The position numbers and the translations under genes were made by a program. The notes beneath the pieces are model-generated. The model did not search any database. It was not told where the DNA came from and saw only the letters and a list, made by a program, of their open reading frames with translations. Below are positions 14,141 through 64,000 of a DNA stretch of 64,000 bases, one piece after another. The stretch lies in NCBI GenBank assembly GCA_965637545.1, contig OZ281495.1, forward strand, positions 10,292,001 through 10,356,000. Direction: 5' to 3'. Positions within the stretch are counted from its first letter, which is position 1, and each line of letters starts with the position of its first letter. The DNA is from Phallusia mammillata. Lineage: Eukaryota.

Positions 14141-17100
14141 CTAGTTTAAACCGAAACGATACACGACACCACAGACCAGAACGACCAGCACAACTCCAAG
14201 GAAAGCATACATTTCCTGGTCGTGCGAATCTTGAATGGATCGTAGCATTTCCTCAATATCAACGTATTGTACCCTTTTCCCATCATTTTCCTTCTGGAGC
14301 TCGGAGTTGGTGTGTTGAGAGGAGATGATAATTGGGCCAGCAGAAAGGAGATGTTTATTTCCAGCGGTTGTTATCTCGCGACGACGGCGGCGCTTTTTGT
14401 CACACTGAAATGGACGAAAAACGAGTCTTACTGATTAAAAGCGTTGGTCACCAAAATGCTATTCGTAGAAGTTGCCATTATTCAGTTATGAAAACTTGCC
14501 AAGAGATTTTCAAATACAACAGAAGGTAAGGTTGAAGGTTGCATGACAGGTATTTTATCCCAATTGCAGCAGATTTTCCTGCATAAAAACATGATAGACT
14601 GAATTATGACCGCCAATGCGTTTAATAATGTGCTTAGCAGTTACACCTGTCATGAAACCTAGAAGTGTAGGTAAAATTGTATTTCAGCTAACGTGATATC
14701 TCGTGCTATTTACATTATTTCCGGATTGATTTCGGATGAGCTGACTGTAACATTGGCATCAAACACACAGGTCAAGATGAGACAGTAGATCTTGTAGCGT
14801 TGAACGGGAGCCGATGGATCAAGACGTTTTTGATTCCATACGATGTACGTTAGTTTGATCAGACCGTCAGATTCCTAGATGTAGGTTAATTAGGCTACGG
14901 TGCATTAAACTAGCAAGCTAAATGTCCCAAATTGCTGCTGCAAAACATGCCACTAATAAATGTACAGACTAACAGTATCAATTTGTTTTCGAAAAAATAT
15001 TGAATGTTTAAAATGATTTATGGTTTTACCCAATTTAATTTTTTTAGAGTTTTTTTGTGAACATTTTAAAATATTTTTTTAAAAGGCATATCTTTTGTTT
15101 CAAAGGTTTAAACCAACACGACTTACCGAAGCTACTGGGACGCATTGAGTAATGTTGAAAACAAAATATGGGCGTTGTATATTTGTCACACAACTCGGAT
15201 CAACATCTTCAGGCTTAACATCCTCGCTCGGCGCGATGTACAAGATGTCAAGTTCTTCTGCGTTGAGGTTTTTAAAATTCTCTTCGTTTAAGCTATGAAG
15301 CAAATCATTGATATTGTACAAGGTAGATTGATTAGATGTCACATATGTAACAATTTTTAATTTTTAGATAGACACATAATATTATTTAGGTGCCTTAGTT
15401 GCACGGAAGCACAACAAGAAAATCTGATGTGGTTTTAACTGACAACATTTTGATCCGTATTTGTATTTGATCCGTACAAGGGTCCGTATTTGCAATTGGC
15501 AAAACAATTGCACAACGTTGTTCTGAAGTTTAAAATTGACAAAACAACTGCACAACGTTGTTTAATACACACTCAGACTCTGCTTACTTGATAACCGTTG
15601 TTTCTCCACATTCAATTTGTGCACGGGGAGGAGGTGGACATTCTGCAAACCAACAACAGGCAATAAGCGTTGCGCAGTCCCAGATATTTTACACAAGCAT
15701 CAACATAAAATCGTGGCAATTTGACGGCAGACGTATTTGATAGGAATTTGCATTTGTTGCAAACATATCAAAACAACAGTCAGATATCACTTACTTTTCT
15801 CCACGACAACTTGAAAGAAAGTGTCAGCGGCCCCTGGTTGAGCGTCACTAGCATACATAAGTCGCACTTTGTCACCTCCAAGGACCCAGGTTGTGGAAGA
15901 AGTAAGCCCTGAGTTATAGATTCCATACCTTGTAGGGGACCCAGATTTACCTAAAGCATCCTCAGCCCAGTTTATCTAAACAGTCAAGAGCTATTTACAT
16001 CCATTAACTTAAAGGTACCTGAAACTAGGACCGTTTTATAAATACATGAAATTGTGAAACATAACAAAGTTAAATTACTGAAACTCGTCGAACTATCCAT
16101 CGGTCTATCGCAGTGGTTCGTAACCGGTGAATTACTCTCAAAGCGTCATTTGGTATTTTTAGAGGTAATTACATTACTATTTGTTATTTTCGTGACGTCA
16201 TCCTTATGTGTTAGTTGGTAAGTTTGTAGATTGTAGTATGACAACAACAAAATAGGAACCATCGGCCATCGTAACACAATTGTAAGCAAGATATTCCTTA
16301 CGAAAAGATAGTCTGTCTCTGCCAAGATCATGTCCAGCTTGAACTGAAAAATACAACCAACGTCAGCCTCAAACGTCCAAACGCAAAATAAGCCGGGTGT
16401 TAACGGTGGGCCTCTTTCAATTCTAGTAAAATCTCCAGTGTACGTTTCCCCACAATCTTGCGACGCTAGAAACAAGTTGCAAAAAGTTAGTTGCTGTAAG
16501 CTACCCCAGAAAATGCTGCTGCCACCCCAGAAATTGCCTGGCCGTATTTATATTCGTGCATTACAGATATGGGCTTCTTTCATTTACATGCGCTCTTTTT
16601 AATGGTCGGTATATTTCGAGCATGTGCAAAGCAAGCTCCGCGAAATCTCTTTTGTTTTTAAACAACGCATGGGGAAACCCGTTTGCGCTACTCGCTTCAG
16701 TGATTTCAAGTTTGCTCCACCAGAACAAGTCTGAACAGGACGTAACAATGGCAAATTTCACGTTTTTATGTGTTGTGGATGTTAATTAGCAGTTGGAGAA
16801 TATATTGTTACACAGAGTTTCATTTCCATGCACGGAAAATTTAATTGCAGCCGCCACCATGTGCGCAAATTTCGTGTCGAAACTGCAATGCCGATTCGAT
16901 AGTCTTGCAAAATTGAACTTGTAAAATTAATTTACAGATCTCTGTTTATGTATCACATGCTACGTTGCGTTTTGTGCGTTATGTTACCTTTTCAACCACA
17001 CTACTTCGGATAAATAACGCTACCCAGCACGAGATACACTTTTCCCGCCACTAACCAGTACACTGCTGTGATCACATAACTAACGCATTGTGACGTCATA

Positions 17101-17803
17101 ACTACACATATAGATGGACGATTTGTGACATGACTTTCATAGTTGTTACGTCCAAGTTAAGCAAGATTGCGTACAGAGTAATATACGTGTTTATACCCTG
17201 CCAATATCCGCGAAACGCCATCTACTAACCTTAACGAGTATCGTGGCGTGGTTTGATCACGTAAGGAACCTGACCAAATTTTGCCACCCCACAAAAGAAA
17301 ATTTATGCTAAAAAATCGCCGCCTATGCTTGTTCCTTATAAGTTTGTCAACTGATTTTGACCGGAAAGTAAACATTTTCCATACCGTGATATAATTAGTA
17401 AAACACTAAAATTGTTGAAAGAATGATAATAGAACAGGGTATGATTTCCAGAATCAATTTACCAGGATTTTAGGTGGTTGTGAATTAACAAACAAATGCG
17501 TATGACTTAATTTCAAATGTTTACCTGGCATTGGTTCCCAACTGCAATAATGCCGTTAGCCAGATAAATGGACGTACGAAACATACTTGAGATTAATATT
17601 GAAGCAAAATTACAATTGGCGTCAATTACAATTTGTCCGCCACCGCTGGTGTCAGGTGGAGCAGCTCCACAAAATCCATCAACTGAAATCGACGTAAAAT
17701 AAATATCACACGTTTTATGAAATAAATTAATTTTATTCTTACCTTGACCTGTTCTCAGGAGAACCAGCACAAAAAAGAAATGCCCCCAGGCTTTAAAATC
17801 CAT
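14141..17803 (-). pseudogene. CUB-CUB-ZP array unit U1, lacking exon C and exons I-K
   Basis: Exons A 17743-17803, B 17525-17682, D 16302-16465, E 15795-15975, F 15588-15642, G 15127-15292, H 14714-14874, L 14141-14404. B ends phase 0 but D starts phase 1. Only the acceptor and first ~6 nt of exon I remain (14573-14578). H (phase 2) to L (phase 0) is out of frame. Confidence 0.85.
16500..17327 (-). mobile_element. One-ended DNA-transposon remnant occupying the position of U1 exon C
   Basis: Not homologous to the matching U2 region. Minus strand starts CATAGGCGGCG with GGGGTGGCA subterminal motifs at both ends. The weak reading FWWSKL...FAELALHML...ERS (16561-16761) resembles a hAT C-terminal domain. 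The second TIR is missing. Confidence 0.4.
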
Positions 17804-22249: not shown

Positions 22250-22429
22250 ATCTATTGCAATGCAAACCAATTGAGCGCTATCGAATTTCCTGTTTTTTGA
22301 CGGAACAAAGCGAGCCGCGAACTGAGCGCTTGTGTTCACCTTATAGGTAGCTGACATCATTCCTTTTGCGATAAGCTACACCAAAATGTAGCACTTAGCA
22401 TTCCGTTTTGGCATAGGCTACACTTAAAC

Positions 22430-23382: not shown

Positions 23383-26300
23383 CTAGTTTAACGCGAAACG
23401 ATACACAACACCACACACGAGAACGACCAGTACAACTCCAAGGAAAGCATACATTTCCTGGTCGTGGGAATCTTGAATGGATCGTAGCATTTCCTCAATA
23501 TCAACGTATTGTACCCTTTTCCCATCATTTTCCTTCTGGAGCTCGGAGTTGGTGTGTTGAGAGGAGATGATGATTGGACCAGCAGAAAGCAGTTGTTTAT
23601 TTCCAGCGGTTGTTATCTCGCGACGACGGCGACGCTTTTTGTCACACTGAAATGAACGAAAGGCAATCAGTTTTCCTGACTAAACGCGTTGGTCACTTAA
23701 TTGATTAGCCCAAACACGTTTTTTTTTCGGATTTAAGTAATATTTAGCGTTATAAGTTGACATGCCGAAAGCAGATATTTCTACCACTTACAAAAGACAG
23801 CTTTTGTAGTTAGTTGTTCCAAATAAAAATGAATATTTTTCGATGCTCATCAGTATGACGTTATCGCTTACCTCATCCGGGCAAAGTCCTGCGTCAGTAT
23901 CACATATGGTGACGTCACAGTGCACGTACAATTCTTGTTCAGTGACGTTGGTCCACACAAAGGAACGAAATTTGAACTTTCCGTAGATTGGGTGACTGTT
24001 TCTCATCACCACAATTGCATTGGCAGGATCGTATGGGTTTGATGCAGGGCAGCTGAATAACAAAAAAACACAACGTTGTTGATTGCTCTTTTCTTTTTGA
24101 GCAGAATTAAATTTTAAATTGGTCTAATAAATGCTATGAGAATGTGAAAACGATGCGTTTAAATAAAAAAATTTGGTCCCCCCAAACTTTGTTGCCATCT
24201 GAAAAGTTGACAGGAATATTGCTAAAATAAATTATTTGCATTGTTTTCATGCAGACCTAGGTGACCTTACGATGTATGTGATTTCACTTTGATGAAGATA
24301 AACACAAATAAAAAAAGATACCTGGCGGTGATGATGGGATATATTGGGGTAGAAGTTGGTTCCATTCCCTCTGTAGCCCAACATGACGTCATCTGCAGCA
24401 ATCAAAACAAGATTTCTATCATTACAATTTTATAACTAAGCTACAAACAGGCAATGAAGAAATTATGTTACGTCGTTGTATTGGCAGACCCACTACACCT
24501 TACAACGTTTATTTAGCGTGCTCCGATGCAAAGTTGTAAGTTCGATAGCGCTAATCGAGTCTGACGCGGGCTTGACTTTGCACTCGACCTAATTTATGTC
24601 GCAAACGTTAAAACAACGAAATGAGAACTTACATCCACTTGAAAGTTGTCGGCGGAATCAGGGAGATCAGAAAGTTCCACTTTGGCGAAAACGTAGTCAG
24701 AAACCATAACTGTGTCGCCGTCGCTTAGTGATTCTTCAAGTGAATCGTCGCTGTACAAATCTAATGACACCTGAAATTCTCCTTCTGCTGGATCCGTGTC
24801 AAATCCAATTTTCCTGCATAAACACAAGACCCACTGAATTAGGAGCAAAAGTGTGGTTAATAATGTGCATAGCAGCTACAACTGTAATAAAACCTAGAAG
24901 TGAGGGTAAAATTGCATTTCAGCTAACGTGATATTGTGTGATATTTACATTATCTCGGGATTGATTTCGGATGAGCTGACTGTAACATTGGCATCAAACA
25001 CACAGGTCAAGTTGAGACAGTAGATCTTGTAGCGTTGAACGGAAGCCGATGGATCAAGACGTTTTTGATTCCATACGATGTACGTTAGTTTGATCAGACC
25101 GTCAGATTCCTAGATGTAGGTTAATTAGGCTACGGTGCATTAAACTAGCAAGCTAAATGTAATAAATTCCCGCCCGCAAAACATGCCACTTGTTACATCG
25201 CCATCGTACATATTATTATGTTTTCTATGTTTCCCGCCAGTAGGCTTAACTCACTTGTATGGCGCAATGTTGTGCAACCTGGTGACATTGTCTGTCACAC
25301 ATTTGGTGCTTATGATGTCACAACCTTGGCATTGTTTTACTGAAGTCCCAACTTGTAAGCGTGACTGCCTCGTGTTTATTAGCGACTGGATGTTATAGAG
25401 GCAGCATGCTTTATCTAATTGACCGGTTATGTTTGTTTCTTTGCTAACGAATAGGAAATTTGTGCTAACTGAACTGTTGCCGGTCGTCCAATGTGTAATT
25501 TGTGCATTTCTGGCCCACGGATCCCACCGTCGTCAGCCAACTTGCTGTTTGCTGTAAATAACTGTATTTTTCCGGTAAGCCTTGTTGCTTAAAGTCTCGC
25601 AGTTCGTTACTAATCTGTTTTGGTGATGTTTATTGAATTTGATGCTGTATTTGCAGAACCTAAAATCTCCTGATCGCTTTGAATGTTACTGTGACTCTGG
25701 TCCTATAATAGTTCGGTAAGAGTCAACTGTACTGATAATTTCTCGTCTGTTTCCTTAACTAAATTAGTGCATATTTGCAGAAACCGCATTTGCCTTTGTG
25801 CTCGTCTTGCTGCTGAACCCTTGAGCACCGTCTCTGTCCTGAATTGCCTTAATAAAAGAATTCGTTATTTTGGCTCTTGGTGCCTTGGAGTTGTTGAGCG
25901 CGAGGAAAGGCGCGTTGAGAACCGTTCTAGGAATTTAAGCGATCACCCCTGCTGTGCTGTCTGGGCGCATAGAGTCACGCCCTCTACCAATTAAAAGACA
26001 GCGCAACATAGTTTCGAACTAAAGGACGTTTCGAACTGAAGGACGTTTCAGAACCTTTGGACACTTGTAAGATCATATCTTATTCAATAGAATCAAGCTT
26101 GAAAATCTCTGCAATGGAAACTGGTAAATCCGTCACTCCTTCGCTTGATTTCTTTTCCATTGCTGATGCCCATGGAGGGGACAAGGTTTCCAGCTGCGCG
26201 TACGCCTGGAAACAAGCTTGTTGGCAATGTAAGGAATTAATGCTGAAGGCCAGAAATGTTGATCTCGTGAAAGGGTATATTCCGTTGGTTGAAACCATCT

Positions 26301-29300
26301 TCAACAATCTTATTGCCGCGTACGCCACCTTTGCTAATGATAACGAAACCATATCTCAAGCGCGAAAAGAATGCCAACAGGCTAAACGTGAACTCGATTT
26401 CCGTGTACAAGAATGGATAGTAAACGTCGAGAAATCTAAGGGTGACCACGAAACTCGTACAAGCTACTCGTCCAGCTCCAATCACGGTTCCGCAAGTATT
26501 CGAACGTCTGGTTCGACGGAAAGTTGCCGAAGGGCTGCTCGGGTGCGGCTGCGCGTGGCTCGCTTGTTGCGAAAGCAAGTTTACGAAGATGTAGCACTGA
26601 AGAAGCAACAAGTCGAGCATCAAGCTGCTATTGAGCAGCAGCAGGTCGCCCTCGAAGCCAAACCTGTCGTTTCTCTTGGAAACTGTTCTAGAGAGCCAGC
26701 ATACGTAACAACTAGATCACCCGCTGTGATCAAGACTCCGACGAAACATGTAAAGATGTCACTGCCGCATGTTCCGAAGATGGATGCAAAGCCAGTTCTT
26801 GCTCCTTCTGTCGGTCCACCTATCGATAGGTCACGCACCTGTTGCGACTCCTATCCTCCATACATGAACAAACCGCGTGCTTCTACCCCGCTTAAATGTG
26901 TACCTGACACTGATTTCGTACAACAGCAAATAGTCCTGCCTCAGCCGGCCATCAAGAAGTTCGACGGCGATCCGTTGAACTACTGGTCGTTTGTTCGTGC
27001 CATTGAGTCGCATGTTCATCGCAGAACAAAATCTGAAGAATCGCGACTTGTTTGCTTGCTTCAATACTGTGAAGATTCTGTTGCTGACAAACTCGAAATG
27101 TACAGCAAGGATACAGTCTCTGGGTATTCAAAGGCGCGTTCCCGACTGTATTATGATTATGGTCAGCCACACATTGTTGCCAATGCCTGCGAACGTCGCT
27201 TAAGGCTTTTCCCGCCCGTTAGACCCGATCGACCAAAGGAACTGATGGAGTTTTCTGATCTGCTTCTAAGATGCCGTAGCTCTCTGGAAGACATCCAAGA
27301 GTACGCGAGTTTGAATTCACTGGATATGTTGAAGCAATTGATCTGGAAACTTCCATTTGATCTTCAAAGGGAATGGGTGGAACGATCTTTCCAAGTGCTT
27401 GACGAGACCGGGAGACAAGCTGGATACCTTGCGTTTACAAGTTTCGTTGTGCGGTGCGCTCGTGTGGCCAATTCGCTGTTTGGAACAGAAGTGGTCTACG
27501 AGGCCGTGCGCGATAAACCGCGAATTGAAACAAGGAAAGGTTCAAGGGCCGCGGCATACAGCATCTCATTATCGAAGTTCGACAGGGCACGTTCTAAGAA
27601 TTCGCCAATTCTTGTTTCGTGTGTCTGTTGCAAGCAGTCACATGAATTGTCCGTGTGCCCGGAATTCGACAAAATGACACTGCTCAGGCGTCGTGAGTTT
27701 GTGCGCTCAAATAGCCTTTGTTTCAAATGTCTTTGTTCGGGTCATCGTTGTCGAAAATGTCCGATTCGGAAATCGTGCTCCGTTGAGGGTTGCGCTGGTA
27801 ACTTTCATCACACGAAGCTGCATGGAACCTTCAAGAGAAGGCCAGCTTTCAAAAATTCGAGAAATTCTGCCATGGTAACGACGAATGCGTCCGACAATAA
27901 CTGCGGGGTCTACCTCAATATCGTGGCGGTAAAGGTCAGACATAACGGGATTGAGGTACACACATATGCCTTTCTTGACCAAGGCTCTACTTCTACATTT
28001 TGTGAACAACGACTGATTGACAAACTCGGCTTGCAGCGTAAAGGTCGAAAAATCTGCTTGAGTACACTCACCGACAAATCCCGAGTGTATCAAGGTTCCA
28101 CGGTGTCCTTAACTGTCACGCCGTTTGAAGGTGGAGAACCTCTAAAGTTGAAAGAGGTTTTGTCCATTGACGAAATTCCTGTTTCGCCGAATTGTAATCC
28201 AGCACCGAGTGTTCTTCACGAGTTTTCACATCTTCAAGGTTGCAGCCTGCCCTGTTTGAAAGGAGGAACGGTCACCATCCTCATTGGCGCTGACGTTCCA
28301 TCTGCCTTTAACGTCCTGAGTACGTGCTCGGGTCCACAAGGTCCGTGTGCTGTAAAGACACCCCTTGGGTGGTCACTTTTTGGTCCCGAAGTTAGTTCGT
28401 CCGCTACGAACAAGACCGACGTCCGATGCATGAGAGTGGCCAAGGTTATGTACCAACAGGAAAGGAAAGGCAAATATAGCGACAGGAAACCAGTTCACGG
28501 TGCGCCTACATTTGGCAAGGAGCGAATCACTCTGGATTCAACAAAAAGGTCTGTCAAGCACCGCGATAAACGTTCAAAACTTCCGTTGTCACGGAAGGTT
28601 CGTGCAGAAACGCTGCAGGCTGGCCGCTCGATGGCTGGCAAGCGTCTCGTCAGTTTACACAGCGAAGGTTTCTGTGAAAAGGATGTTGATACGATGCAGA
28701 CTTACAATTCCAAGGGTCGTGCTGAAGAGGTTTCTACTCCCGGGCAATTTTTGTGTTTGCCGTTCAATTTGAATTCGAGTGAGAACAAGCTAGACAGGCG
28801 GCTTAACTGTTGTGCTAGGAGCCCAAAGGTCTGTCCTGATAATGCTGAAGTGCTGGGTCCTCACTTGGGTTGTGCTATGGAGCCTCCGAATGTTGACAGA
28901 ATTTGTTTTCATTTATGGCCTGATGGAAATTCATGCTGCTCTCCGACGCCTCATGGGATGAAAGTGCCCATGTTTGGGTCCTGGTTGTGTGATCTGCGAT
29001 CGTCTCGTGATGACGACATTGTTCCACTGATCGATGATTCCCGTTGCCACTTCAGTGAGAAGCTAATCTTTCGTGCCAATCCTGGTGGATTTCGAGGAGT
29101 TAATATCGAGCTCGCACTGGCGAGCGGCGGTACGCTCCGGTGTCCGGTTAAAGGACTTGACCACATTATTGATTCTGATGAGAGTTCGGCATCAGCCCCT
29201 CCGAGTGATTGCAGCCCAGACTTCTGGGATGAACGCCGAGTTGACTGTGCGGTGCGCTGGTGTTGAGGACTGTCCGACGTTGTTTTTGCCGCATTGCGAT

Positions 29301-32300
29301 GCGCGCGCGATTGGCGATGTTGTGTTTGAAAATGTGTCCCGCATTTTGTGGGGGAGTGTTACATCGCCATCGTACATATTATTATGTTTTCTATGTTTCC
29401 CGCCAGTAGGCTTAACTCACTTGTATGGCGCAATGTTGTGCAACCTGGTGACATTGTCTGTCACACATTTGGTGCTTATGATGTCACAACCTTGGCATTG
29501 TTTTACTGAAGTCCCAACTTGTAAGCGTGACTGCCTCGTGTTTATTAGCGACTGGATGTTATAGAGGCAGCATGCTTTATCTAATTGACCGGTTATGTTT
29601 GTTTCTTTGCTAACGAATAGGAAATTTGTGCTAACTGAACTGTTGCCGGTCGTCCAATGTGTAATTTGTGCATTTCTGGCCCACGGATCCCACCGTCGTC
29701 AGCCAACTTGCTGTTTGCTGTAAATAACTGTATTTTTCCGGTAAGCCTTGTTGCTTAAAGTCTCGCAGTTCGTTACTAATCTGTTTTGGTGATGTTTATT
29801 GAATTTGATGCTGTATTTGCAGAACCTAAAATCTCCTGATCGCTTTGAATGTTACTGTGACTCTGGTCCTATAATAGTTCGGTAAGAGTCAACTGTACTG
29901 ATAATTTCTCGTCTGTTTCCTTAACTAAATTAGTGCATATTTGCAGAAACCGCATTTGCCTTTGTGCTCGTCTTGCTGCTGAACCCTTGAGCACCGTCTC
30001 TGTCCTGAATTGCCTTAATAAAAGAATTCGTTATTTTGGCTCTTGGTGCCTTGGAGTTGTTGAGCGCGAGGAAAGGCGCGTTGAGAACCGTTCTAGGAAT
30101 TTAAGCGATCACCCCTGCTGTGCTGTCTGGGCGCATAGAGTCACGCCCTCTACCAATTAAAAGACAGCGCAACACCACTAATAAATGTACAGACTAACAG
30201 TATCAATTTGTTTTCGAAAAATCCGGGTCTGAAAGTGTAATTTGGCACATGGCGAGAAAGTTGATGTTTTCGATGCTTCTGTTTCTGTTTATTGACATGT
30301 AGGTCACAGTAGGGTAACAACTTTTGAATGTTTAAAAAGTTTTATGGTTTTAACCAATTTACTTAATTTTTTGTAGATTTCAAATAATTTATTTTTTTGA
30401 AAGCACATTTCTTTGTTTTTAAGGTTTAAACCAACACGACTTACCGATGCTACTGGGACGCATTGAGTAATGTTGAAAACAAAATATGGATGTTGAGTAT
30501 TTGTCACACAACTCGGATCAACGTCTTCAGGCTTAACATTCTCGTTGGGCGCGATGTACAAGATGTCAAATTCTTCGGCGTTCAACTTGTTTAGATTCTT
30601 TTCGTCAAGGCTATAATACAAAACAAGGTTTATGTGCAAAAAAGAAAGATAATTCTCTCACGCCACTCTAAATTGCATTGTTAACACTACAGAAAAACTG
30701 GCAACGTTTCACACGAGACATGCAACTGTACTTAAAGTAGAAATGTACCGAATATTCGGTTTTCCGAATTTTTTAAGCAAAGCGTTGATTTTGTACAAGG
30801 TAGATTGATTAAGCAACGATGTCACATTGGTAACAATTTTTATTTTTTAGATGGACTCCTAACAATGTTTAGGTGATTTGGTTGCACGGAAGCACAACAA
30901 GAAAACCTGATGTAGTTTTAACTAACAACATATTGACATCAGACTATTGGCATTTGGCAAAACAACTGCACAACGTTGTTCAAAACACACTCAAAATCTG
31001 CTTACTTGATAACCGTTGTTTCTCCACATTCAATTTGGGCAGGAGGAGGGGGAGGGGGAGGTGGTGGACAAGCTGCAAATCAACAACAGATAATAAGCGT
31101 TGCGCAGTCCTACATATTTTACACAAGCATCAACATGACATCGTGGCGATTTGACGGCAGACGTATATGATGAATTTGTATTTGTTGCACGGCAGACGTA
31201 TTTTGACGGCAGACGTATATGAAGAATTTGTATTTGTTGCACACATAACGAAACAACAGTCAGATCACACTTACTTCTCTCCACGTCAACATGAAGGTAA
31301 GTGTTAGAAGCCCCCGGTTGACTTTTGCTAGCATACATAAGTTGTACTTTGTCACCTCCAATGACCCAGGATTGGGAAAAATTAAACGCCCCGTTATAGG
31401 TTCCATACCTTGTTTGGGACCCAGTTTTACCCAAAGCATCCTCATCCCAGTTTATCTAAAAGGTCAGGAGCTATTTACATTGAATAACGTGAATGTATCT
31501 GAAATAGGATCGTTTTATAAATACATGAAATGGTGAATGTTAACACAGTTTAATTACTAAAACTTGTTGAATTATCCATCCGTTTGTCGGAGTGGTTCGT
31601 AACCGGGGATTAATTACTTATAAAGAGCAATTTGTATTTTTAGAGGTAATTTTCTATTTGTTATTTTCGTGACGTCATCCTCCAGTGACGTCTTAGTTTG
31701 TAGATTGTAGTAACGATAATAAAAAAGTTCGGAACCATCGGCCTTCGTAACACAATTCTAAGCAAGATATCCCTTACGAAAAGATAGTCTGCCGCTGAAA
31801 AGACCATGTCCAGGTTGAACTGAAAAGTACATCCGACCTCAGCCTCAAACTTCCAAACGCAAAATAAGCCGGGTGTTAGTGGTGGGCCTCTTTCAATTCT
31901 AGTAAAATCTTCATTGTACGTTTCCCCACAATCTTCCGTCGCTACAAACAAGTTGCGAAGTTGAACTTATCTTAGTTTATATTACAGGACCGCTAGTTTC
32001 AGAACGTTAAGCAAAACCTGATTTTTTCGCATGGCAATTGCCAAATCAAAGTTTATTTTTATTTAAAGATGAAAAAATTATCCGTACCCAAACATACGTC
32101 TTTAGATTCTAAAAATGTGCAAATTCTGTTCAATTAAAAAACTGTAAAAAATGCGCGTTTTTGTAGGTCATACATGCTTGGTGTCTCCAATCTAATGGAA
32201 AAGCAGCAGTGTTGATGCAGGTAAGAAATAAGTTGAAACCTGATGAACGCACACCACCGGTCTCTGTACCAACGTTAATAAAAGTGCCAAGCAACGTTGC

Positions 32301-33064: not shown

Positions 33065-34807
33065 CGTAAAACTACTTGCTAAATGATTGAGACCCAACAA
33101 AATTAAGATCCGACTATTCTGTAAACGACCTCAGGTAGTAGCCTAATGAACACCCTTTATTGGGATCTGTATGCTTTATGTTACATTAACAGTGTTTCGC
33201 AAAGGCAGAAGGGATAGAGGATGCGTTTGGATTAGTCATTTGTCGGTTTGGCATGGATTGTTTTGCACTAAGGCTTTGATTACCATACCAACGATATGGT
33301 TATTTTTAAACTGCGCTCTGGGCTAAAAAAATGTGAGAAAAATTTCCTAATCAATTTAAATTCAAAAGAATTTTGTTCAATCACACGCAGAGTAAAACAG
33401 GCGAATAGCTCATTTGGCTGGATTCAAAAACTCCAACAAATCTAATAGCAATTGGGATGGCATTTTCGAGATAAACGACTGGAATACGTCAGTCAGTTTT
33501 GTAGTTTAATGCATACGGCTTTCGAGGTTTCGAGTTTATACCAAACAACACGGTGGAATTATATCAAGCCTAATCATATATTGCTACACGAGCAACCCAA
33601 GCTTTGAATATCCTGTTTTCTGCTATGGTTCTAGCTACTGATGAAGCCGTTCCAGGTAAACACTATGGACGGAAATATCAGATTATTCATCCTTTTCACA
33701 ACACAAACCATTCTGTTTACTGCAATGCTTCTGCCAGCATGCGAACCTTCTGGCATTTTTGTCTTTGTGCACAAATACCGTTTAGGGAAACATGGTAACG
33801 TTTAGCAACTGAAATAAGGGAACGCGAACCCCGGTTTAGAAAACGGAACGTTATATCGATGGTAATACCACCCTGTGAATGATAGCAATGGTGTTGTGTG
33901 CACTATATGGTCTTGTTACTCTGCTGCCTTATGCAGTATAGTTCAAAGCTGCCCGGGAATGTTTTTCGGCAAAAACGTAAATCTACATGTTTTAAAATTC
34001 ATATTACATCAGTGTGTTTTGACCTTAGTATAGCTGCGGCCCGAAACAAACCACACTATGAAGGGTTATTTCGTATTTGGAGAGTTGTAAGCGGGTCCGT
34101 TGTGTCCCAAATTGGGCTCAAAAGTCAGATTACGTAACGTGATATTACTTTACAAATGTTAATATAGGTCCTGATTCAAATTAGACATTCCCGAATCCAA
34201 ATCCCTTACAATTCTAATCCATGTGCATAAAACTAATCATGACAAGTAATGAGAGGTATTAACCGGGTTTGCTGTCTTACGCAATACATACGCCGGTTGC
34301 AGAAGCCTTTTCGAGCACAATGGTTGTGTAGTAAAGCAGAAAACATCAGAATTAGTCATCTATTGCAATGCAAACCAATTGAGCGCTACCGAATTTCCTG
34401 TTTTTTGACGGAACGAAGCGAGCCGCGAACTGAGCGCTTGTGTTCACCTTATAGGTTGCTGACATCATTCCTTTTGCGATAAGCTACACCAAAATGTAGC
34501 AGTTAACATTCCATTTTGGCATACACTTAAACCAAGGCTCTGCGACCCTTTATAGTTAATATGATAAACAGTGCAAAAATATGCATTTCTTGTATTTATT
34601 ACAGGCTTATTTCGAGCGTGAAATAAAAACAAAAAAGCAAACATTTATTTCGTGTGATGGGTGCGACTGCTTTCTGCTACCAAGCAAGTCCAGCAGTGGC
34701 TCAATATTTGTTAATTCTGGTCTTAAAGCTGTTTCTAGGTTGCTTAAAGCTGGAACGGTATTTTGTTTTGATTGCTGTCAACGTTGAAAACGCTGACTTC
34801 AGAGAAT

Positions 34808-35115: not shown

Positions 35116-35210
35116 GGGAGGGATGACAGCAGCCTACACGTGGCCCCTCCTGTTAAGGCATTAAGTCCTCTGCGCAAAGACGACCTCTAATGCCGAACAG
35201 ATGCTGTCAT
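35116..35210 (+). ncRNA. HDV-like self-cleaving ribozyme at the LINE 5' end
   Basis: P1 GGGAGGG (35116-22) / CCCTCCT (35145-51) with G1-U wobble; P2 ATGACAGCA (35123-31) / TGCTGTCAT (35202-10); P3 GCC/GGC with 7-nt L3 TACACGT; P1.1 AC/GT (35136-37 / 35152-53); P4 GGCATTA/TAATGCC; J4/2 C-A-G-A with candidate catalytic C35198. Activity is inferred. Confidence 0.88.
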
Positions 35211-46100: not shown

Positions 46101-46463
46101 GAATGAGCAAACAGCGATCGCAGGGAGTTTAAATTGTGTCCAACGTTTAAATAATTAAAAAAGGTTTGTTGATTTTTAGAAGAACTAGCATTGCCATGAA
46201 TGTAAAAAGACTTGCGTCTGAACGAGCGTGGTGAATTTAATAAATTCACTGAAACGAAATAAATCAAATCTATATGATAAAATTTTATCTGTGCCAAACT
46301 ATTGAATAAAATGCCAATCACACTTACACCTTTCCACGTCAACACAAAATTAGCGCAAAATTAATATTCGGAGTTTTATTACTAAAGAAATGTTATTCTT
46401 ACCTTGATCTATTGTCAGGACAACGAGTACAACAAACAACCGCCCCCATTTTGTAAAATACAT
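43126..46463 (-). CDS. Array unit U4: CUB-less signal-ZP-furin-TM protein, 379 aa
   Basis: Exons A 46403-46463, F 45952-46006, G 45258-45423, H 44804-44964, I 44487-44667, J 44220-44290, K 43613-43793, L 43126-43389; 1140 nt, no stops. A (phase 1) joins F (phase 1). Only an 18-nt scar of exon E remains (46328-46345). Confidence 0.82.
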
Positions 46464-48200: not shown

Positions 48201-51200
48201 CTAGTTTAAAGCGAAACGGTACACAACGCCACAGACCAAAACGACCAGCACAACTCCGAGGAAAGCATACATTTCCTGGTCGTGCGAATCTTGAATGGAT
48301 CGTAGCATTTCCTCAACATCAACGTATTGCACCCTTTTCCCATCATTTTCCTTCTGGAGCTCGGAGTTGGTGTGTTGAGAGGAGATGATGATTGGACCAG
48401 CAGAAAGGAGTTGTTTATTTCCAGCGGTTGGTATCTCGCGACGACGGCGGCGCTTTTTGTCACACTGAAATGGACGAAGGGCAATTAGTGTTACTGACTG
48501 AATGCGTTGGTCACTTAATTGCTTAGTCCATAAAAGTCGTTATTTTTCGTATTTAAGTGATTTTCAGCATAAACAATTGACATGTCGAAAGGAGGAGGTG
48601 TTTCTATAACACTTGCAGAAGACAGCTTTATAATTAGTAGTTTCAAAAACTAATGATTATATTTCGATGCACATCAGTATGACGTTATCGCTTACTTCAT
48701 CCGGACAAATTCCTGCGTCAGTATCACATATGGTGACATCACAGTGCACGTACAGGGTTTGTTCAGTGACGTTGGTCCACACGAAGGAACGAAATTTGAA
48801 CTTTCCATAGATTGGGTGGCTGTTTCTCATCACCACAATTGCATTGGCAGGATCGTATGGGTTTGATGCAGGACAGCTGTAAAAAAACACAACGTTGCTG
48901 ATTGTTTTTTTGTGAGCAAACACAATTTTGTTCCAATATTTTGGTTGTTTAAAATAACTACTTTCAAAAACGACAAAAACTTATTTCTGCCGATGCCGCT
49001 TTACGGAAAAGCAAAAACATGGCTTCAAACTTTAAAATACAACAAAAAATATTAATATTAATTCGTCATGTTGTTTTAATGCCTAGGTATGTAATCATAC
49101 AACATGATATTTTACTTTGGCTTAAGCAAATATAAATAAAGTTGTACCTGGCTGTGATGATGGGATATATTGGAGTAGAAGTTGGTTCCATTCCCTCTGT
49201 AGCCCAGCATGACGTCATCTATAACAGGCCTGTCAAACTCGCGGCCCGCGGGCCGCATGCGGCCGACGAAGCCCTCCAATGCGGCCCACGAACAGTCAAC
49301 AACAATTGTAGTATTTTGTCAGACTTTTATCTAATTACACTAAATTTGTCTTACTTTTCAAGTTGAAAGCTATTATTTAAACTGACGTTTACCGAAACTT
49401 AATTTATACATACAAATTCATATGTTATGAATAGAAACGATAGTAATTGAACCGTTTCTTAAAGTTTCAGTCAAGGGTGTACAACCCGCGGCCGTACGGC
49501 CACATTGAAATATATGTACTGGCAGGCGTGATGTAATTAAAACTTCTTTGCCAAAACTTTTGATTTTCAAACTGCCCTAAACAGATTTTTGTGTTACCGA
49601 AAAGAGTATTACCAGCCTAGTAGCCATATGCGACAGACTTTTTGTAGGCGTATTGTGTGCAAACAATGCGAAAAACAGGTACAAAAAGCGTCACAATATA
49701 GATTATGACGTAATAATAGAGTTAAAACTGCGGGTCTTCACATTGTGGAGCTTAATCTGTATAATAAGTTGGAAATTAATCTGGGCTTTTTGGGCGTCAA
49801 TAGATGGTATATATATGATATAAACCTTTTTCTTGTAATTTTTAAACAAAAACAGCAGATAATTGGCTGCCGTTGGTGAAATAAGGATCTACAATGCGGT
49901 CGTCGTAGCGAAAAGGTTGTTTAAGTGTATACAACTAGATTAAAAATCACATGCGGCCCACGGCATAATTCCCAAACTGCAATGTGGCCCGCGAACCCCA
50001 CGAGTTTGACACCCCTGATCTATAACAATTAAAACAAGATTATTTTTTGTACCTGTTTAACTAGGCTAAAAAACGGTTCCCTATAGGATGGTTCTGGGTT
50101 TAGTTACCAAACCTGATACCCCTTAACTTATGTTTCATCACTTTACACATGTATTAAACAGGATGCTAAAATGCCTTTTCGATTGCGAAGCGATTTCAAG
50201 CAGACATTTACGAAAACTGAAAACGGTTAATTGCAAACTTACATCCACTTGAAAGTTGTCGGCGGAATCAGGGAGATCAGAAAGTTCCACTTTGGCAAAA
50301 ACGTAGTCGGAAACCATAACTGTGTCACCGTCGCTCAGTGGCTCTTCAAGTGAATCGTCACCGTACAAATCCAATGACACCTGAAATTCCCCTTCTGCTG
50401 GATCAGTGTCAAATCCAATTTTCCTGCATAAACACAAGACCGACTGACTTATGACCGAAAGTGTGTTTAATAATATGCTTAGCAGCTACAACTGTAATAT
50501 AACCTAGAAGTGTATAGGTAAAATTGCATTTTAGATAATTTGATATTGTGTGATATTTACATTATCTCGGGATTGATTTCAGATGAGCTGACTGTAACAT
50601 TGGCATCAAACACACAGGTCACGTTGAGACAATAGATTTTGTAGCGTTGAACAGGAGCCGATAGATCAAGGTATTTTTGGTTCCATATAATGTACGTTAG
50701 TTTGATCAGACCCTCGGATTTCTGGCAAAATGTTAGTTACGGTGTGTTAAACAACTAAGCTTTATGTTGAGATCAGCCCTTTAAGAAGAAATCGGTCCTT
50801 GCAAAGTGGTTTGTATTACTTGTACAAAATTGAAGACACAGATTTTTTAAAATAAGTTACTTTCCATCTGAAAAAATGGCTCCTATTGTTAACTATTATT
50901 TAGACGGCTTTAAAGACGACTGGAGGCTCACAATTGTCGTAAAAATTTTGTTGTCAACATTTTAAATTTGTTTTTTTCTGATTTGCATCCACAGAAAGTA
51001 ACTTCTGTCATTGTTAAGGTTTACCCCAACAAGACTCACTGTAGCTACTGGGACGCATTGAGTAATGTTGAAAACAAAAAATGGGCGTTGTCTATTTGTC
51101 ACACAACTCGGATCAACATCTTCAGGCTTAACATCCTCGCTGGGCGCGATGTACAAGATGTCAAGTTCGGAGGCGTTCAACTTGTTTAGATTTTCTTCGT

Positions 51201-53420
51201 TCAAGCTATAAGACACAACATTAATTTAGTACCAGGTAGATTGATCATTTACGTATACCATTGTAAGTTACACTTGCGTTTGAGTTCAAAATGGACTACA
51301 AAAAAAGACACAGTCAAAAGCGTAAAAACGTCGTTTTGAAGAAATGCACACAAAAACTACTTACTTAATATTTGTTGTTTGTCCACACTTAATGGATGCA
51401 GGGGGAGGGGGAAGTGGTGGACAAACTGCAAACCAACAACGCATGTAATTAGTCTATAGCGCTGTGTCATGATTTTGCCATGGATCTACAATGACAAAAT
51501 CCGAACGAGCAAGGACGAATATAATAAATTAACTCAAAGAAAATGGATCGAATCTTTATGATAGAAAGTGGTATCTGTGCCGAAATAACAAACAACAGTC
51601 GGATCACACTTACACATTTCCACGTCAACATGAAAGTAAGCGTATTCGGCTTGTGCCTCACTAACAAACATAAGTCGCATTTTGTCGCCCCTAACAAACC
51701 AACTTGTGGACACGCTAACTTCGGTGTTAAAAGTTCCATACCTTTTTGGCGTCCCAAAATTTTCTAAAGCATCCTCAGCATAGTTTATCTAAAATCAACA
51801 TATAAAATGACTTTAATGTATCCAAAAACATGATCGTTTAATGAATACATGAAATTGTAAAACAACACATTATAAACTATCAATCGGTCTGGCGCAGTGG
51901 TTTTAACTTGTGGGTAATTACTGACCAAGGTATAATTTTGTTTTTGTAATTACATAACCATTTGTTATTTTTGCGACTTCACCCTTCGTGGCGCCTTAAT
52001 TGGTAATTTTAGTTTTTTTTTTTTTAAACAGGAGTAATAAACGGTAGTTTTTTGAAACGGGAGTAACGGGAGTAATAAATTTAGCACTATTATATTGTAA
52101 CGCAATACCAACACGTTCTTTTTTCCTTACGAAAAGAACTTGTGTCGCTGCTAAGGTCAAGTTCAGCGTGAACTGTATAGCACATCCTAGACGAGCCTCA
52201 AACGTCCAAACGCAAAATTCACCGGCAGTCAGCGGTGGACCCCTTTCAATTCTAGTAAAATCTTCAGTGTACGTTTCCTCACAAATTTGATTCACTGCAA
52301 AGAAGTTGCTAAAATATTGATGCTGTATGGTAGGTTCGACTTGTTTATGGTTTATAAATCAGTGGCAGGCCTGTTGTACGAATACGATATTCGACGGGCA
52401 CACTGCCCAGGCTGTGTATGGATCATTTGGTAGAGCGCGAGTCCCTGGTTTATGTTACGAAATTGCTAAATCCTTTCGCACAGCTTTAATTGTATTAAAG
52501 TTTATTTTTATTTAAAAATACACTGGTGAATATGGTTACAATAAAAATAGCGGCTCTCATACTTACGACTTAGGATCGTAAAACGTACAAATCCTTTCCA
52601 AATACAAAAGTGTCTAAGCTGAAGGCCATGTAAGACACTCATACTTTAAGCATGTTTTTTAACTCTTAATAAGAGTTGTTTTCAAATCGTAATAAAAATC
52701 AGAACATACCTAATTGATATCTGAAATAAACTGGGTCAGGTCCAGTATTGGTACAGAGGAGGAATATACTCCCACTTAAAGAAAGTACACCACCGGTCGC
52801 CGAACCATCGCCAGTAAAAGTACCAAGCGGTATTCCATTGCCATCTGTTATGTCAAAAGCCTGCACGGCCAAAAACAAAACAATTTCACGACTCAAAACA
52901 ACCAACTGTGTTTTTAAAAGACCAACAAAATTAGGGTAGAAGAGAGCATTGGCATACTGAAAAAATCCAATACATAAAATAATCATTGTTACGTAAGGAA
53001 GATCAAACTAAATTGCTTGAGAACCACCGGAGCAGCCAACAAAAAAGCCACATCACACATTTGTACATGACTTTGTTGTTGTTTTTTGCATTGAGCAACA
53101 AAATAAGTCAAACTTGACTTTAAGTGCAGCATATTTGTTTACCTGGCATTGGCCTTCTTCAAAAATGGTACCTAGAGCAAGGTACATCGACGAGCGCATC
53201 GAACTTATTACTGATACCGAAGCAAAATCACAATCGCTGTCAATCGCAAGTAGTCCGCTATCGCTGTTTTCGGGAAGAGCATTTCCACAAAGTCCATCAA
53301 CTAAAGTTGGCGCAAAATGAATAGTCGGCGTGTTAAGAACAAAGTAAAGTTGTGTTTACCTTGACCTGTTTTCAGGACAACTAGCACAACAAGTAACCGC
53401 CCCAGTGCTTCAAAATACAT
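48201..53420 (-). CDS. CUB-CUB-ZP transmembrane protein, unit U5, full length, 597 aa
   Basis: Exons A 53360-53420, B 53143-53300, C 52710-52860, D 52131-52294, E 51614-51788, F 51365-51425, G 51040-51205, H 50561-50721, I 50243-50423, J 49148-49218, K 48696-48876, L 48201-48464; 1794 nt in frame. The exon-J acceptor is affected by a MITE. Confidence 0.85.
49225..50017. mobile_element. hAT MITE inserted at the exon-J splice acceptor of U5
   Basis: TIR CAGG(CC/GG)TGTCAAACTC; TSD ATCTATAA (49217-49224 and 50018-50025); near-identical sister copy at 54081-54845. Confidence 0.95.
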
Positions 53421-62276: not shown

Positions 62277-64000
62277 CTAGTATAAAGCGAAACGATACAC
62301 AACACCACAGATGAGAACGACCAGCACAACTCCAAGGAAAGCATACATTTCCTGGTCGTGGGAATCTTGAATGGATCGTAGCATCTCCTCAACATCAACG
62401 TATTGCACCCTTTTTCCATCATTTTCCTTCTGGAGCTCGGAGTTGGTGTGTTGAGAGGAGATGATGATTGGACCAGCAGAAAGCAGTTGTTTATTTCCAG
62501 CGATTGTTATCTCGCGACGACGGCGGCGCTTCTTGTCACACTGAAATGGATGAAGGGCAATTAGTTTTACTGACTAAATGTTTTTCTGACTAAACGCGTC
62601 ACTGAATTGCTTAATTCAGTGGGGGGCGATTTCGTCTACCGAGGGGGCGATGGTGACAATTTTGGGAGTTGGGGGGCGATATGACTTCACAAGAGGGCGA
62701 TTTCAACATTACTGATTGTATAAATATGTACGAGAACTGTGAGGCTCAGCTAACTTTAACTTACAAGCAGATATAGTTTGTCATGCAAACAAACACCAGG
62801 GACAAGCGTCGCATTAGCATAAAGATGCTGCTATTTGAATACATTGTGTTTACTGGTGATTGTACTTTTTGTGATCTCGAAAGCATGCTTGGGCAGTTCA
62901 TTAGCCACAGGGACTTTATTGGGGCTATGTATGGTGACCGGCCTTCTTTTTTAAATACAACGGTAACGAGCTTTACTTCAAACTTGTTTCGCTTTCACAC
63001 TGCAAATTTTCCTATAAAACTACAAGCGCTTTCCCAAAAAAAGTATTTGTATCATTTAGGATTCTCCTCTTCCAAGTAATGCCCCATTGTTTTCAACAAA
63101 AGAAAGCGATTGTTTGCGCATAATCGTAGTATTGTTTTGTCTATGAATGAACGACCTTTTCACAGGTGTGTCAAAAGAATTGCGTGAAATGGACTTTGCA
63201 TGTTGTAGAAGCAATTAAAGTAGGGAAACTTTTATACAAATAACAATCTCATAAAGGGGCTATTTTGAGCCAGTGCCTTGGAAAGGGGGCAATTGAAGCA
63301 AAAAGGTTGAAGACCCCTGGCTTAATCCATAAAAAGCGTTAAGTGATTTTCTGCGTTAAGTTGACATGTCGGAAGGAGATGTTTCTATAACACTTGCAAA
63401 AGACGGTTTTTCCTAATTAGTCGTTCCAGAAATTAATGATCATTTTTCGAACTACATCAGTATGACGTTATCGCTTACCTCATCCGGACAAAGTCCCGCG
63501 TCAGTATCACATATGGTGACGTCACAGTGCACGTACAATTCTTGTTCAGTGACGTTGGTCCACACGAAGGAACGAAATTTGAACTGTCCATAGATTGGGT
63601 GACTGTTTCTCATCACCACAATTGCATTGGCAGGATCGTATGGGTTTGATGCAGGGCAGCTGAAAAAACAAAAAAGGTTGTTAATTGCTCTTTTCTTATT
63701 GAGCAGAATTGAATTTTAAACTGTTCTTTTTTTGAAAAAAATGCTATGGGAATGTGAAAACCATCCATGTTTTCACAATGAAATTAAAAAAATTTGTTCC
63801 CCCCCCAAACTTTGTTCCCACCTCAACAGTTGACAGGAAAATTACTAAAATAAATTATATGCATTGTTTCAATGCAGACCTAGGTGACCTTACGATGTAA
63901 GTGATTTCACTTTGATGAAGATAAACAGAAATGAAAATTGTACCTGGCTGTGATGATGGGATATATTGGAGTAGAAGTTGGTTCCATTCCCTCTGTAGAC
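62277..64000 (-). CDS. Array unit U6, 3' part only (exons J partial, K, L); continues beyond the window
   Basis: L 62277-62540, K 63479-63659, J from 63944 to the window edge; open frame with the same ZP-C, RRRRR and TM motifs. Confidence 0.85.
62617..63319. mobile_element. hAT-type insertion in U6 intron K/L
   Basis: Right end GGTTGAAGACCCCTG; left end eroded; near-perfect TSD GCTTAATT / GCTTAATC; absent from the same intron in U2, U4 and U5. Confidence 0.7.

What the first reader, a model, noticed from the sequence alone, without database searches (positions are those of the whole stretch)
14141..64000. Tandem CUB-CUB-ZP array with variable heads on a near-constant ZP/TM stalk
Six units share one exon plan. 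N-terminal exons are strongly diverged. Exon E reads INWAEDALGKSGSPTRYGIYNSGLTSSTTWVLGG in U1, INWDEDALGKTGSQTRYGTYNGAFNFSQSWVIGG in U2 and INYAEDALENFGTPKRYGTFNTEVSVSTSWFVRG in U5. Exon K is identical in U2, U4 and U6 and differs by two residues in U5, and exon L is almost invariant. ZP modules polymerise after furin cleavage (established), so a homogenised ZP would let paralogs co-assemble into one filament or matrix displaying different CUB-like binding heads (inference). That would be a combinatorial extracellular recognition system for egg coat, mucus or allorecognition, evolving by birth-and-death with 3' gene conversion.
Basis: partly seen in the sequence, partly recalled or inferred. 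Interest (0 to 1): 0.85.

Follow-up and report, generated by a model that had tools for sequence, protein, structure and literature searches.

The report
Ascidian CUZD1-like gene cluster, mosaic evolution
A sea-squirt genome carries a tandem cluster of CUZD1-like (CUB-CUB-ZP-membrane anchor) genes, only some intact, whose polymerising tail is kept nearly identical by purifying selection plus patchy gene conversion while the CUB heads diverge; this is a tidy but not unprecedented case of domain-specific concerted evolution.

Summary
The array is real and lies on the minus strand. The three quoted exon-E peptides are exact. "Six units share one exon plan" is overstated. Only U2 (599 aa) and U5 (597 aa) have all 12 exons with open frames. 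U4 is an in-frame copy without CUB exons (379 aa). U1 lacks exons C, I, J and K and is frameshifted. U3 is a 99% copy of the 5' half of U2 with a stop codon, a 13-nt deletion and a LINE at its end. Only the last three exons of U6 are in the window.

The closest database protein is a Phallusia mammillata "alpha-tectorin-like" protein, so this is an ascidian locus. Fold searches give CUZD1 and PCPE-1 CUB pairs for the head and the uromodulin polymerisation region for the tail.

Between U2 and U5 the heads have dN 0.37, dS 0.5 and omega about 0.75. The tail has dN 0.04, dS 0.19-0.24 and omega about 0.18. Adjacent introns support conflicting trees (51:0 against 0:19, p=1.6e-17). Patchy 3' gene conversion is therefore shown, on top of strong purifying selection.

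Mixed-filament or allorecognition function is untested. First-reader notes report similar arrays on two other pieces of this genome.

The parts
14141..17803 (-). U1, pseudogene of the alpha lineage. Exons A 17803-17743, B 17682-17525, D 16465-16302, E 15975-15795, F 15642-15588, G 15292-15127, H 14874-14714, L 14404-14141. Exons C, I, J and K are missing.
   Evidence: Joined exons are frameshifted, and no remnant of C, I, J or K was found.
23383..33064 (-). U2, intact 12-exon gene (599 aa), alpha lineage. A 33064-33004, B 32943-32792, C 32324-32174, D 31941-31778, E 31455-31275, F 31072-31006, G 30610-30445, H 25109-24949, I 24813-24633, J 24392-24322, K 24052-23872, L 23646-23383.
   Evidence: open frame and GT/AG at every intron. 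Signal peptide, two CUB-like domains, proline-rich linker, ZP-N, ZP-C, RRRRR cleavage site, TM helix.
25191..30174 (+). LTR element inside U2 intron G-H, with 818-bp LTRs that are 100% identical (25191-26008 and 29357-30174) and a 1084-aa open frame.
   Evidence: No Pfam family on the open frame.
37991..40084 (-). U3, pseudogene: a 99% copy of U2 exons A-G. A 40084-40024, B 39963-39812, fused C/D 39343-39083, E 38760-38580, F 38427-38361 (contains a TGA), G 38167-38015 (13-nt deletion). No exons H-L.
35116..38033 (+). LINE (endonuclease plus reverse transcriptase, 959-aa open frame) abutting the truncated 3' end of U3.
43126..46463 (-). U4, intact frame of 379 aa without CUB exons, beta lineage. 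A 46463-46403, F 46006-45952, G 45423-45258, H 44964-44804, I 44667-44487, J 44290-44220, K 43793-43613, L 43389-43126. The deletion joins intron A to the last bases of exon E. Exons A and F are both phase 1.
48201..53420 (-). U5, intact 12-exon gene (597 aa), beta lineage. A 53420-53360, B 53300-53143, C 52860-52710, D 52294-52131, E 51788-51614, F 51425-51365, G 51205-51040, H 50721-50561, I 50423-50243, J 49218-49148, K 48876-48696, L 48464-48201. Intron I-J holds a 744-bp repeat at 49279-50022.
62277..64000 (-). U6, 3' end only: part of exon J 64000-63944, K 63659-63479, L 62540-62277. The frame is open as far as it can be seen. Intron J-K is alpha-like and intron K-L is U5-like.
23647..24052 (-). 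Conversion tract between U2 and U4 (partner 43390-43793): exon K plus intron K-L. Exon K dS is 0.027, and intron K-L has p=0.10 against 0.19-0.25 to the other units.
24633..25109 (-). Conversion tract between U2 and U5 (partner 50243-50721): exon H, intron H-I and exon I. About 91% identical over 485 nt, while the flanking introns G-H and I-J are unalignable between U2 and U5.
33065..33310 (-). Conserved block of about 250 nt upstream of the ATG, shared by U1-U5 across both lineages (mean column identity 74%). Likely a common promoter or 5' UTR.

Best explanation
This is a lineage-specific tandem cluster of CUZD1-like genes in an ascidian genome. Each full gene encodes a signal peptide, two CUB domains, a proline-rich linker, a ZP-N/ZP-C module, a poly-arginine furin-type site, a beta-strand after the site that fits an external hydrophobic patch, and a TM anchor with a six-residue cytoplasmic tail.

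The cluster evolves by birth-and-death. Intron sequence defines two old lineages: alpha (U1, U2, U3 and the J-K part of U6) and beta (U4, U5). Within these, copies have been duplicated, decapitated, truncated, hit by transposons and pseudogenised.

The ZP/TM half stays almost identical at the protein level for two reasons. Shown: strong purifying selection, with omega 0.06-0.10 in ZP-C and exon L. Shown: repeated short inter-paralog gene conversions centred on the 3' exons, which halve synonymous divergence and make neighbouring introns support different trees.

The CUB heads are not homogenised and evolve about ten times faster at non-synonymous sites (omega about 0.75). This fits weak constraint, with or without some diversifying selection.

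Inferred function: like uromodulin, GP2, CUZD1 and DMBT1, the proteins are cleaved at the basic site, shed from the apical membrane and polymerised through the ZP module into an extracellular coat (egg coat, mucus or another apical matrix) that displays CUB heads as ligand-binding units. Paralogs with near-identical ZP modules and a shared upstream block could co-polymerise.
For: Gene models and their defects.

Family: the closest protein is the Phallusia mammillata 'alpha-tectorin-like' protein (78% identity in exon K). Relatives in Clavelina include one named CUZD1.

Head: the model (pLDDT 70) matches CUZD1 residues 25-265 (E 1.9e-10) and the CUB pairs of PCPE-1 and neuropilin.

Tail: the model matches the uromodulin polymerisation region 4wrn (E 1.9e-11) and UMOD, GP2 and ZPD filaments. 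Pfam finds ZP-C on window exon K (1.4e-8). The Atlas feature search gives a CUZD1 cluster at 0.93.

Selection, U2 against U5: heads dN 0.37-0.39, dS 0.48-0.51. Exons G-L dN 0.036-0.038, dS 0.19-0.24. Synonymous differences are 65/171 sites in exons A-F against 46/223 in G-L, Fisher p=1.8e-4.

Conversion: informative sites in intron G-H are 51:0:0 and in intron J-K 51:0:1 for alpha|beta, but in intron K-L they are 0:19:2 for (U2,U4|U6,U5), p=1.6e-17. Triplet patterns are heterogeneous along G-L (p=6.7e-6). U2-U4 exon K has dS 0.027.

Calibration: LG protein distance U2-U5 is 0.97 in heads and 0.07 in tails. To the Phallusia protein it is 1.13-1.37 and 0.31.

Shared upstream block.
Against: Tail dS of 0.19-0.24 is not low, so homogenisation is old or patchy rather than ongoing. 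Introns G-H, I-J and J-K remain unalignable between lineages.

No CUB Pfam hit was obtained on single window exons. The CUB assignment rests on a model of the Phallusia homolog, with window exons only as alignment rows.

The Phallusia protein may be a paralog from the same or a close species rather than an ortholog, which weakens the distance calibration.

The tools give no expression, protein or polymorphism data, so cleavage, shedding, polymerisation, co-assembly and tissue are inferred from family knowledge only.

The slightly higher GC3 in tails (0.46 against 0.36-0.40) could reflect codon preference rather than biased conversion.
Confidence: 0.72

Rival explanations
1. Combinatorial recognition system. 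Heads are under diversifying selection for self/non-self or gamete recognition. Paralogs are co-expressed and co-polymerise into mixed filaments that display many different heads.
For: Head omega of 0.72-0.80 is about four times that of the whole tail and eight to twelve times that of ZP-C. ZP modules and the upstream block are shared across units. Scan notes report two more such arrays in the genome. Ascidian vitelline coats contain many ZP proteins, and polymorphic ZP proteins are candidate allorecognition molecules (PMC9265791; Kurn et al. 2007 as cited in PMC3543715).
Against: Omega is below 1 and there are too few sequences for site models. Only two intact heads lie in this window. Known ascidian egg-coat ZP proteins carry EGF repeats, not CUB domains, and the window genes have no EGF. 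No polymorphism or expression data are available.
Confidence: 0.18
2. Uniform-age duplicates with no conversion. The contrast between heads and tails comes only from different selective constraint.
For: Very low omega in ZP-C and exon L. The head/tail rate contrast also exists against the Phallusia protein.
Against: Synonymous divergence differs 2.1-2.7 fold (p=1.8e-4). Adjacent neutral introns give mutually exclusive trees (51:0 against 0:19). The head/tail distance ratio is 13.7 within the array but 3.6-4.4 to Phallusia and about 1.4-1.5 among Clavelina paralogs.
Confidence: 0.04
3. Part of the array is an assembly artefact. U3 and its upstream flank are a mis-placed second haplotype of U2 rather than a true paralog.
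For: U2 and U3 are 98.6-99.2% identical over about 2 kb (31202-33513 against 38505-40533), with 94-95% in the flanking blocks of the roughly 4 kb duplicated segment. Ascidian genomes are highly heterozygous (general knowledge).
Against: U3 carries a stop codon, two deletions, a 565-bp insertion upstream and a LINE junction that are absent from U2. It lies 5 kb away in tandem, and no N gaps flank it.
Confidence: 0.06

Closest known systems
Vertebrate CUZD1 (CUB and zona pellucida-like domain-containing protein 1)
   Same: Same order of parts: signal peptide, two CUB domains, ZP module, C-terminal TM. It is the best structural match for the head and the best Atlas feature match. A Clavelina relative is annotated with this name.
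   Different: Only about 15% sequence identity in the heads, and orthology is not established. Here it is a multi-copy tandem cluster with pseudogenes and a copy without CUB exons, plus a proline-rich linker and a poly-arginine site. The function in tunicates is unknown.
Uromodulin/GP2-type polymerising ZP proteins
   Same: The ZP-N/ZP-C module matches the uromodulin polymerisation region and the UMOD and GP2 filaments. A basic cleavage site is followed by a predicted beta-strand and a membrane anchor.
   Different: The heads are CUB rather than EGF/D8C. The anchor is a TM helix rather than GPI. Polymerisation is not shown.
Ascidian vitelline-coat ZP proteins (HrVC120/HrVC70, CiVC57 and the eleven Ciona VC ZP proteins)
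   Same: Tunicate ZP proteins with a C-terminal TM and proteolytic processing. Some are polymorphic and implicated in self/non-self recognition (PMC9265791).
   Different: Those described carry EGF repeats or vWF domains, not CUB pairs. The window genes have no EGF. The Clavelina relatives have one EGF-like domain after the ZP module.
Gene families with domain-restricted concerted evolution (general knowledge: abalone VERL repeats, DMBT1 SRCR/CUB repeats, immune receptor clusters)
   Same: A structural or anchoring part is homogenised by conversion while the ligand-binding part diverges. The turnover pattern is birth-and-death.
   Different: A different protein family and phylum. Here conversion tracts are short, centred on exons and superimposed on two old lineages.

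Membership tests
CUZD1-like (CUB-CUB-ZP-TM) proteins | Two N-terminal CUB domains | tested here: met
   An AlphaFold model of the Phallusia homolog head, with window exons B-E in the alignment, gives two beta-sandwiches. Foldseek finds CUZD1 residues 25-265 (E 1.9e-10) and the PCPE-1 and neuropilin CUB pairs. Caveat: Pfam CUB did not hit single window exons and gave only E=0.009 in a Clavelina relative.
CUZD1-like (CUB-CUB-ZP-TM) proteins | ZP module (ZP-N plus ZP-C) C-terminal to the CUB domains | tested here: met
   Pfam ZP-C on window exon K (1.4e-8) and weakly on exon I. The tail model matches uromodulin 4wrn over both subdomains.
CUZD1-like (CUB-CUB-ZP-TM) proteins | Signal peptide and C-terminal transmembrane helix | tested here: met
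   Read directly from the translated models: a hydrophobic N-terminus in exon A and an 18-residue hydrophobic stretch in exon L. A helix is predicted at the C-terminus of the model.
CUZD1-like (CUB-CUB-ZP-TM) proteins | Orthology with vertebrate CUZD1 | not tested
   No phylogeny with vertebrate CUZD1, DMBT1 or OIT3 was built. The HMMER hits were almost all tunicate.
Polymerising ZP-module proteins (uromodulin type) | Consensus basic cleavage site after ZP-C, followed by an external hydrophobic patch strand | tested here: met
   The KKRRRRRE motif is invariant in all five exon L copies. A strand is predicted 10-20 residues after it, with pLDDT about 84.
Polymerising ZP-module proteins (uromodulin type) | Cleavage-dependent assembly into filaments | not testable with these tools
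   Needs expression and microscopy.
Ascidian vitelline-coat ZP proteins (VC70/VC57 type) | EGF-like repeats N-terminal to the ZP module | tested here: not met
   No EGF in the window gene models or in P0001. The heads are CUB-like.
Ascidian vitelline-coat ZP proteins (VC70/VC57 type) | Expression in oocytes or follicle cells and presence in the coat | not testable with these tools
   No expression or proteome data could be reached.
Concerted evolution by inter-paralog gene conversion | Tree discordance between adjacent segments and locally reduced neutral divergence | tested here: met
   Intron J-K gives 51:0:1 and intron K-L gives 0:19:2 (p=1.6e-17). dS is 0.027 in exon K between U2 and U4, against 0.19-0.42 in exons G-J. 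The head/tail dS ratio is 2.1-2.7.

The most novel reading that the evidence does not exclude
The near-identical ZP modules and shared upstream block let the intact paralogs, including the copy without CUB exons (U4) acting as a spacer subunit, co-polymerise into mixed filaments whose CUB-head composition is set by which units are expressed. Together with the other arrays in this genome, this would form a diversified extracellular recognition matrix of a tunicate egg coat or mucus, maintained by conversion of the assembly module.
Probability: 0.15. Interest if true: 0.75.

Novelty: new member of a known kind. Interest (0 to 1): 0.4.

Why it matters
ZP proteins build egg coats, mucus and other apical matrices. 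How new binding specificities are added without breaking polymerisation is a real question. This locus shows, in a compact invertebrate chordate genome, a natural split between an assembly module kept uniform and heads free to diverge. That gives concrete constructs (U2, U5, and U4 without CUB exons) for testing heteropolymerisation. It also documents a tunicate expansion of a family that is best known in mammals as a single gene, CUZD1, and that I found undescribed in tunicates in the papers searched. Its value is as a worked example and a resource, not as a new principle.

Tried and rejected
This gave no view of the family's size.

2. Pfam on single exons found no CUB. Structure prediction was needed instead.

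3. Literature searches for tunicate CUZD1-like or CUB-ZP arrays found nothing specific. The Ascidiella genome paper does not mention ZP genes. Yamada et al. 2009 is not held.

4. Positive selection on heads was considered, but pairwise omega is below 1. The omega of 1.2 in U1-U2 exon E is uninformative because U1 is a pseudogene. Site models are impossible with two or three sequences.

5. I considered that exon C of U1 might be diverged rather than lost, and rejected this.

6. I considered that the 'NLFL' tblastn extension upstream of U1 exon D was a remnant of exon C. It is the translated intron polypyrimidine tract.

7. Rfam at gathering threshold found no RNA family anywhere in the window.

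8. Species identity could not be established. The Phallusia protein may be an ortholog or a paralog.
Full report
**Observation**

The three peptides quoted for exon E are present exactly, all on the minus strand. Self-comparison shows direct repeats across 14-64 kb with identities from 73% to 100%.

A whole-library HMMER search with the open frame around exon K found 38 proteins with E up to 0.001. Nearly all of the 17 I looked up are tunicate. The best is a 597-aa Phallusia mammillata protein annotated 'alpha-tectorin-like', with 78% identity over the exon. Further relatives are Clavelina lepadiformis proteins, one of them annotated CUZD1. The locus is therefore from an ascidian.

**Gene models**

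I used the Phallusia protein as a guide together with multiple alignments of the units. This gave a 12-exon plan, A to L, with GT/AG at every intron.

- Exon A encodes the signal peptide.
- Exons B+C and D+E each encode one domain of about 100 residues. Each pair is flanked by phase-1 introns and split by a phase-0 intron.
- Exon F is a proline-rich linker.
- Exons G-H encode ZP-N.
- Exons I-K encode ZP-C.
- Exon L carries an invariant KKRRRRRE site, a hydrophobic strand, a TM helix and a six-residue tail.

The state of each unit is as follows.

- U2 (599 aa) and U5 (597 aa) are the only units with the full plan and an open frame.
- U4 keeps an open frame of 379 aa. It has lost exons B-E through a deletion that joins intron A to the end of exon E. 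Exons A and F are both phase 1, so the frame survives.
- U1 lacks exon C and exons I-K, with no remnant in 13000-23300, and is frameshifted.
- U3 is a 99% copy of exons A-G of U2. It has a 54-nt C/D fusion deletion, a TGA in exon F and a 13-nt deletion in exon G, and a LINE sits where exons H-L should be.
- U6 shows only part of exon J plus exons K and L.
- Exon K is identical in U2 and U4. It differs by one residue in U6 and by two in U5.

**What the protein is**

Pfam finds ZP-C on window exon K (1.4e-8) but no CUB on single exons.

I modelled the head of the Phallusia homolog with AlphaFold, using window exons B-E from U1, U2 and U5 and the Clavelina relatives as alignment rows. The model has pLDDT 70 and folds as two beta-sandwiches. 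Foldseek places it with CUZD1 residues 25-265 of human, mouse and rat (E 1.9e-10 to 5.9e-9). It also matches the CUB pairs of PCPE-1 and neuropilin.

The tail model matches the uromodulin polymerisation region (4wrn, E 1.9e-11). It also matches UMOD, ZPD and GP2 filaments and the ZP-C domain of ZP2. The ESM Atlas feature search gives CUZD1 clusters at 0.93 and 0.92.

**Evolution: selection**

Between the two intact genes U2 and U5, four estimators agree:

| Region | dN | dS | omega |
|---|---|---|---|
| Heads (exons B-E) | 0.37-0.39 | 0.48-0.51 | 0.72-0.80 |
| Exons G-L | 0.036-0.038 | 0.19-0.24 | 0.16-0.20 |
| ZP-C and exon L | not listed separately | not listed separately | 0.06-0.10 |

The difference in synonymous divergence between the two halves is significant. 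It is 65 of 171 sites in exons A-F against 46 of 223 in exons G-L, with p=1.8e-4.

**Evolution: conversion**

Introns are more telling than exons.

- Introns G-H, I-J and J-K split the units into lineage alpha (U1, U2, U6) and lineage beta (U4, U5). Within-lineage p-distances are 0.12-0.21 for G-H and J-K. Between lineages the introns are essentially unalignable, with p-distances of 0.38-0.50.
- Intron H-I is closest between U2 and U5.
- Intron K-L is closest between U2 and U4 and between U5 and U6.

Quartet counts of informative sites make the conflict explicit:

| Intron | alpha\|beta | (U2,U4\|U6,U5) | third grouping |
|---|---|---|---|
| G-H (quartet U1, U2, U4, U5) | 51 | 0 | 0 |
| J-K | 51 | 0 | 1 |
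| K-L | 0 | 19 | 2 |

Intron K-L lies only one 181-nt exon away from intron J-K. The Fisher test gives p=1.6e-17.

Exon K between U2 and U4 has a single synonymous difference (dS 0.027), while exons G-J of the same pair have dS 0.19-0.42. Singleton patterns among U2, U4 and U5 are heterogeneous along G-L (p=6.7e-6).

Short conversion tracts centred on the 3' exons are therefore shown.

**Evolution: calibration against other species**

The LG protein distance between U2 and U5 is 0.97 in heads but 0.07 in tails. To the Phallusia protein the distances are 1.13-1.37 and 0.31. Among Clavelina paralogs, heads are only about 1.4-1.5 times more distant than tails.

This suggests that different constraint explains perhaps a four-fold contrast and that homogenisation explains the rest. 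The Phallusia protein might be a paralog rather than an ortholog, so this calibration is tentative.

**Limits on the homogenisation story**

- Tail dS is not near zero.
- Three of the five 3' introns are not homogenised.
- Omega in the tail is very low.

Purifying selection is therefore at least an equal cause of the constant stalk.

Head omega is below 1. The value of 1.2 for U1-U2 exon E is expected for a pseudogene. Diversifying selection is therefore possible but not shown.

**Regulation**

About 250 nt upstream of the ATG is conserved in all five units across both lineages, with 74% mean column identity. Head introns of the same pairs cannot be aligned. This suggests a common promoter and makes co-expression plausible. 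That step is inference.

**Function**

Nothing here measures expression, cleavage or assembly.

By analogy with uromodulin, GP2 and CUZD1, the likeliest mechanism has four steps:

1. Cleavage at the basic site.
2. Release from the TM anchor.
3. ZP-mediated polymerisation into an apical or egg-coat matrix.
4. Display of the CUB heads as binding units.

The parallels with uromodulin, GP2 and CUZD1 are established family knowledge plus the fold matches.

Described ascidian vitelline-coat ZP proteins carry EGF or vWF domains rather than CUB domains (PMC9265791; PMC3543715). An egg-coat role is therefore only one option.

I found no paper describing tunicate CUZD1-like arrays.

**Context**

First-reader notes record two further CUB-CUB-ZP-TM arrays on other pieces of this genome. 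I could not examine them.

The window also holds a BEL/Pao LTR retrotransposon, a second LTR element inside U2, and a LINE next to U3.

**Verdict**

This is a real, well-resolved tandem cluster of CUZD1-like genes. It has two intact full-length members, one copy without CUB exons, two pseudogenes and one partial unit. It evolves by birth-and-death, with purifying selection and patchy 3' conversion.

It is a new member of a known kind. The combinatorial recognition idea remains a hypothesis.

Noticed in passing
window 6648-13108 (minus strand): Full-length BEL/Pao LTR retrotransposon. It has 376-bp LTRs that are 99.2% identical (6648-7023 and 12734-13108), a 1408-aa open frame with Pao peptidase, integrase zinc-binding domain and DUF5641, and a 410-aa gag-like frame with DUF1759.
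   Followed up: partly
window 25191-30174: LTR element with 100% identical 818-bp LTRs inside U2 intron G-H, on the strand opposite to the gene. Its 1084-aa open frame has no Pfam match at E<=1e-5. It looks like a very recent insertion.
   Followed up: partly
window 35116-38033: LINE with AP-endonuclease and reverse-transcriptase domains. Its 3' end coincides with the point where U3 loses homology to U2 (about 37991). Rfam at gathering threshold reports no ribozyme or other RNA family anywhere in the window.
   Followed up: partly
window 49279-50022 and 54113-54850: A 744-bp repeat, 98% identical between its two copies. One copy lies in U5 intron I-J next to the exon J acceptor, and the other lies in the U5-U6 intergenic region.
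   Followed up: no
window 43126-46463 (U4): The copy without CUB exons keeps an open frame. Its omega against U5 is 0.03-0.35 in exons G-L, so it is either still constrained, recently decapitated or refreshed by conversion.
   Followed up: partly
window 14141-14404 (U1 exon L): The pseudogene U1 keeps an intact exon L with 10 synonymous against 2 non-synonymous differences to U2 (omega 0.05). This suggests recent pseudogenisation or overwriting by conversion from functional copies.
   Followed up: no
about 70-110 nt upstream of each ATG, e.g. window 33130-33180: Conserved motifs CAATAAAGGGTGTTCAT and GTCGTTTACAGAA occur in all five units. The second resembles a splice acceptor and could be a spliced-leader trans-splice site, which is common in ascidians.
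   Followed up: no
exon F of each unit (e.g. 31072-31006, 15642-15588, 51425-51365, 46006-45952): The proline-rich linker varies in length. It has nine prolines in U2 and U3, four in U1, an interrupted run in U5 and none in U4. This suggests replication slippage or adjustment of linker length.
   Followed up: no
exons B-E against G-L of U2 and U5: GC3 is 0.36-0.40 in head exons and 0.46 in tail exons, while introns are 0.28-0.40 throughout. This is compatible with GC-biased conversion in the 3' half but is not diagnostic.
   Followed up: partly
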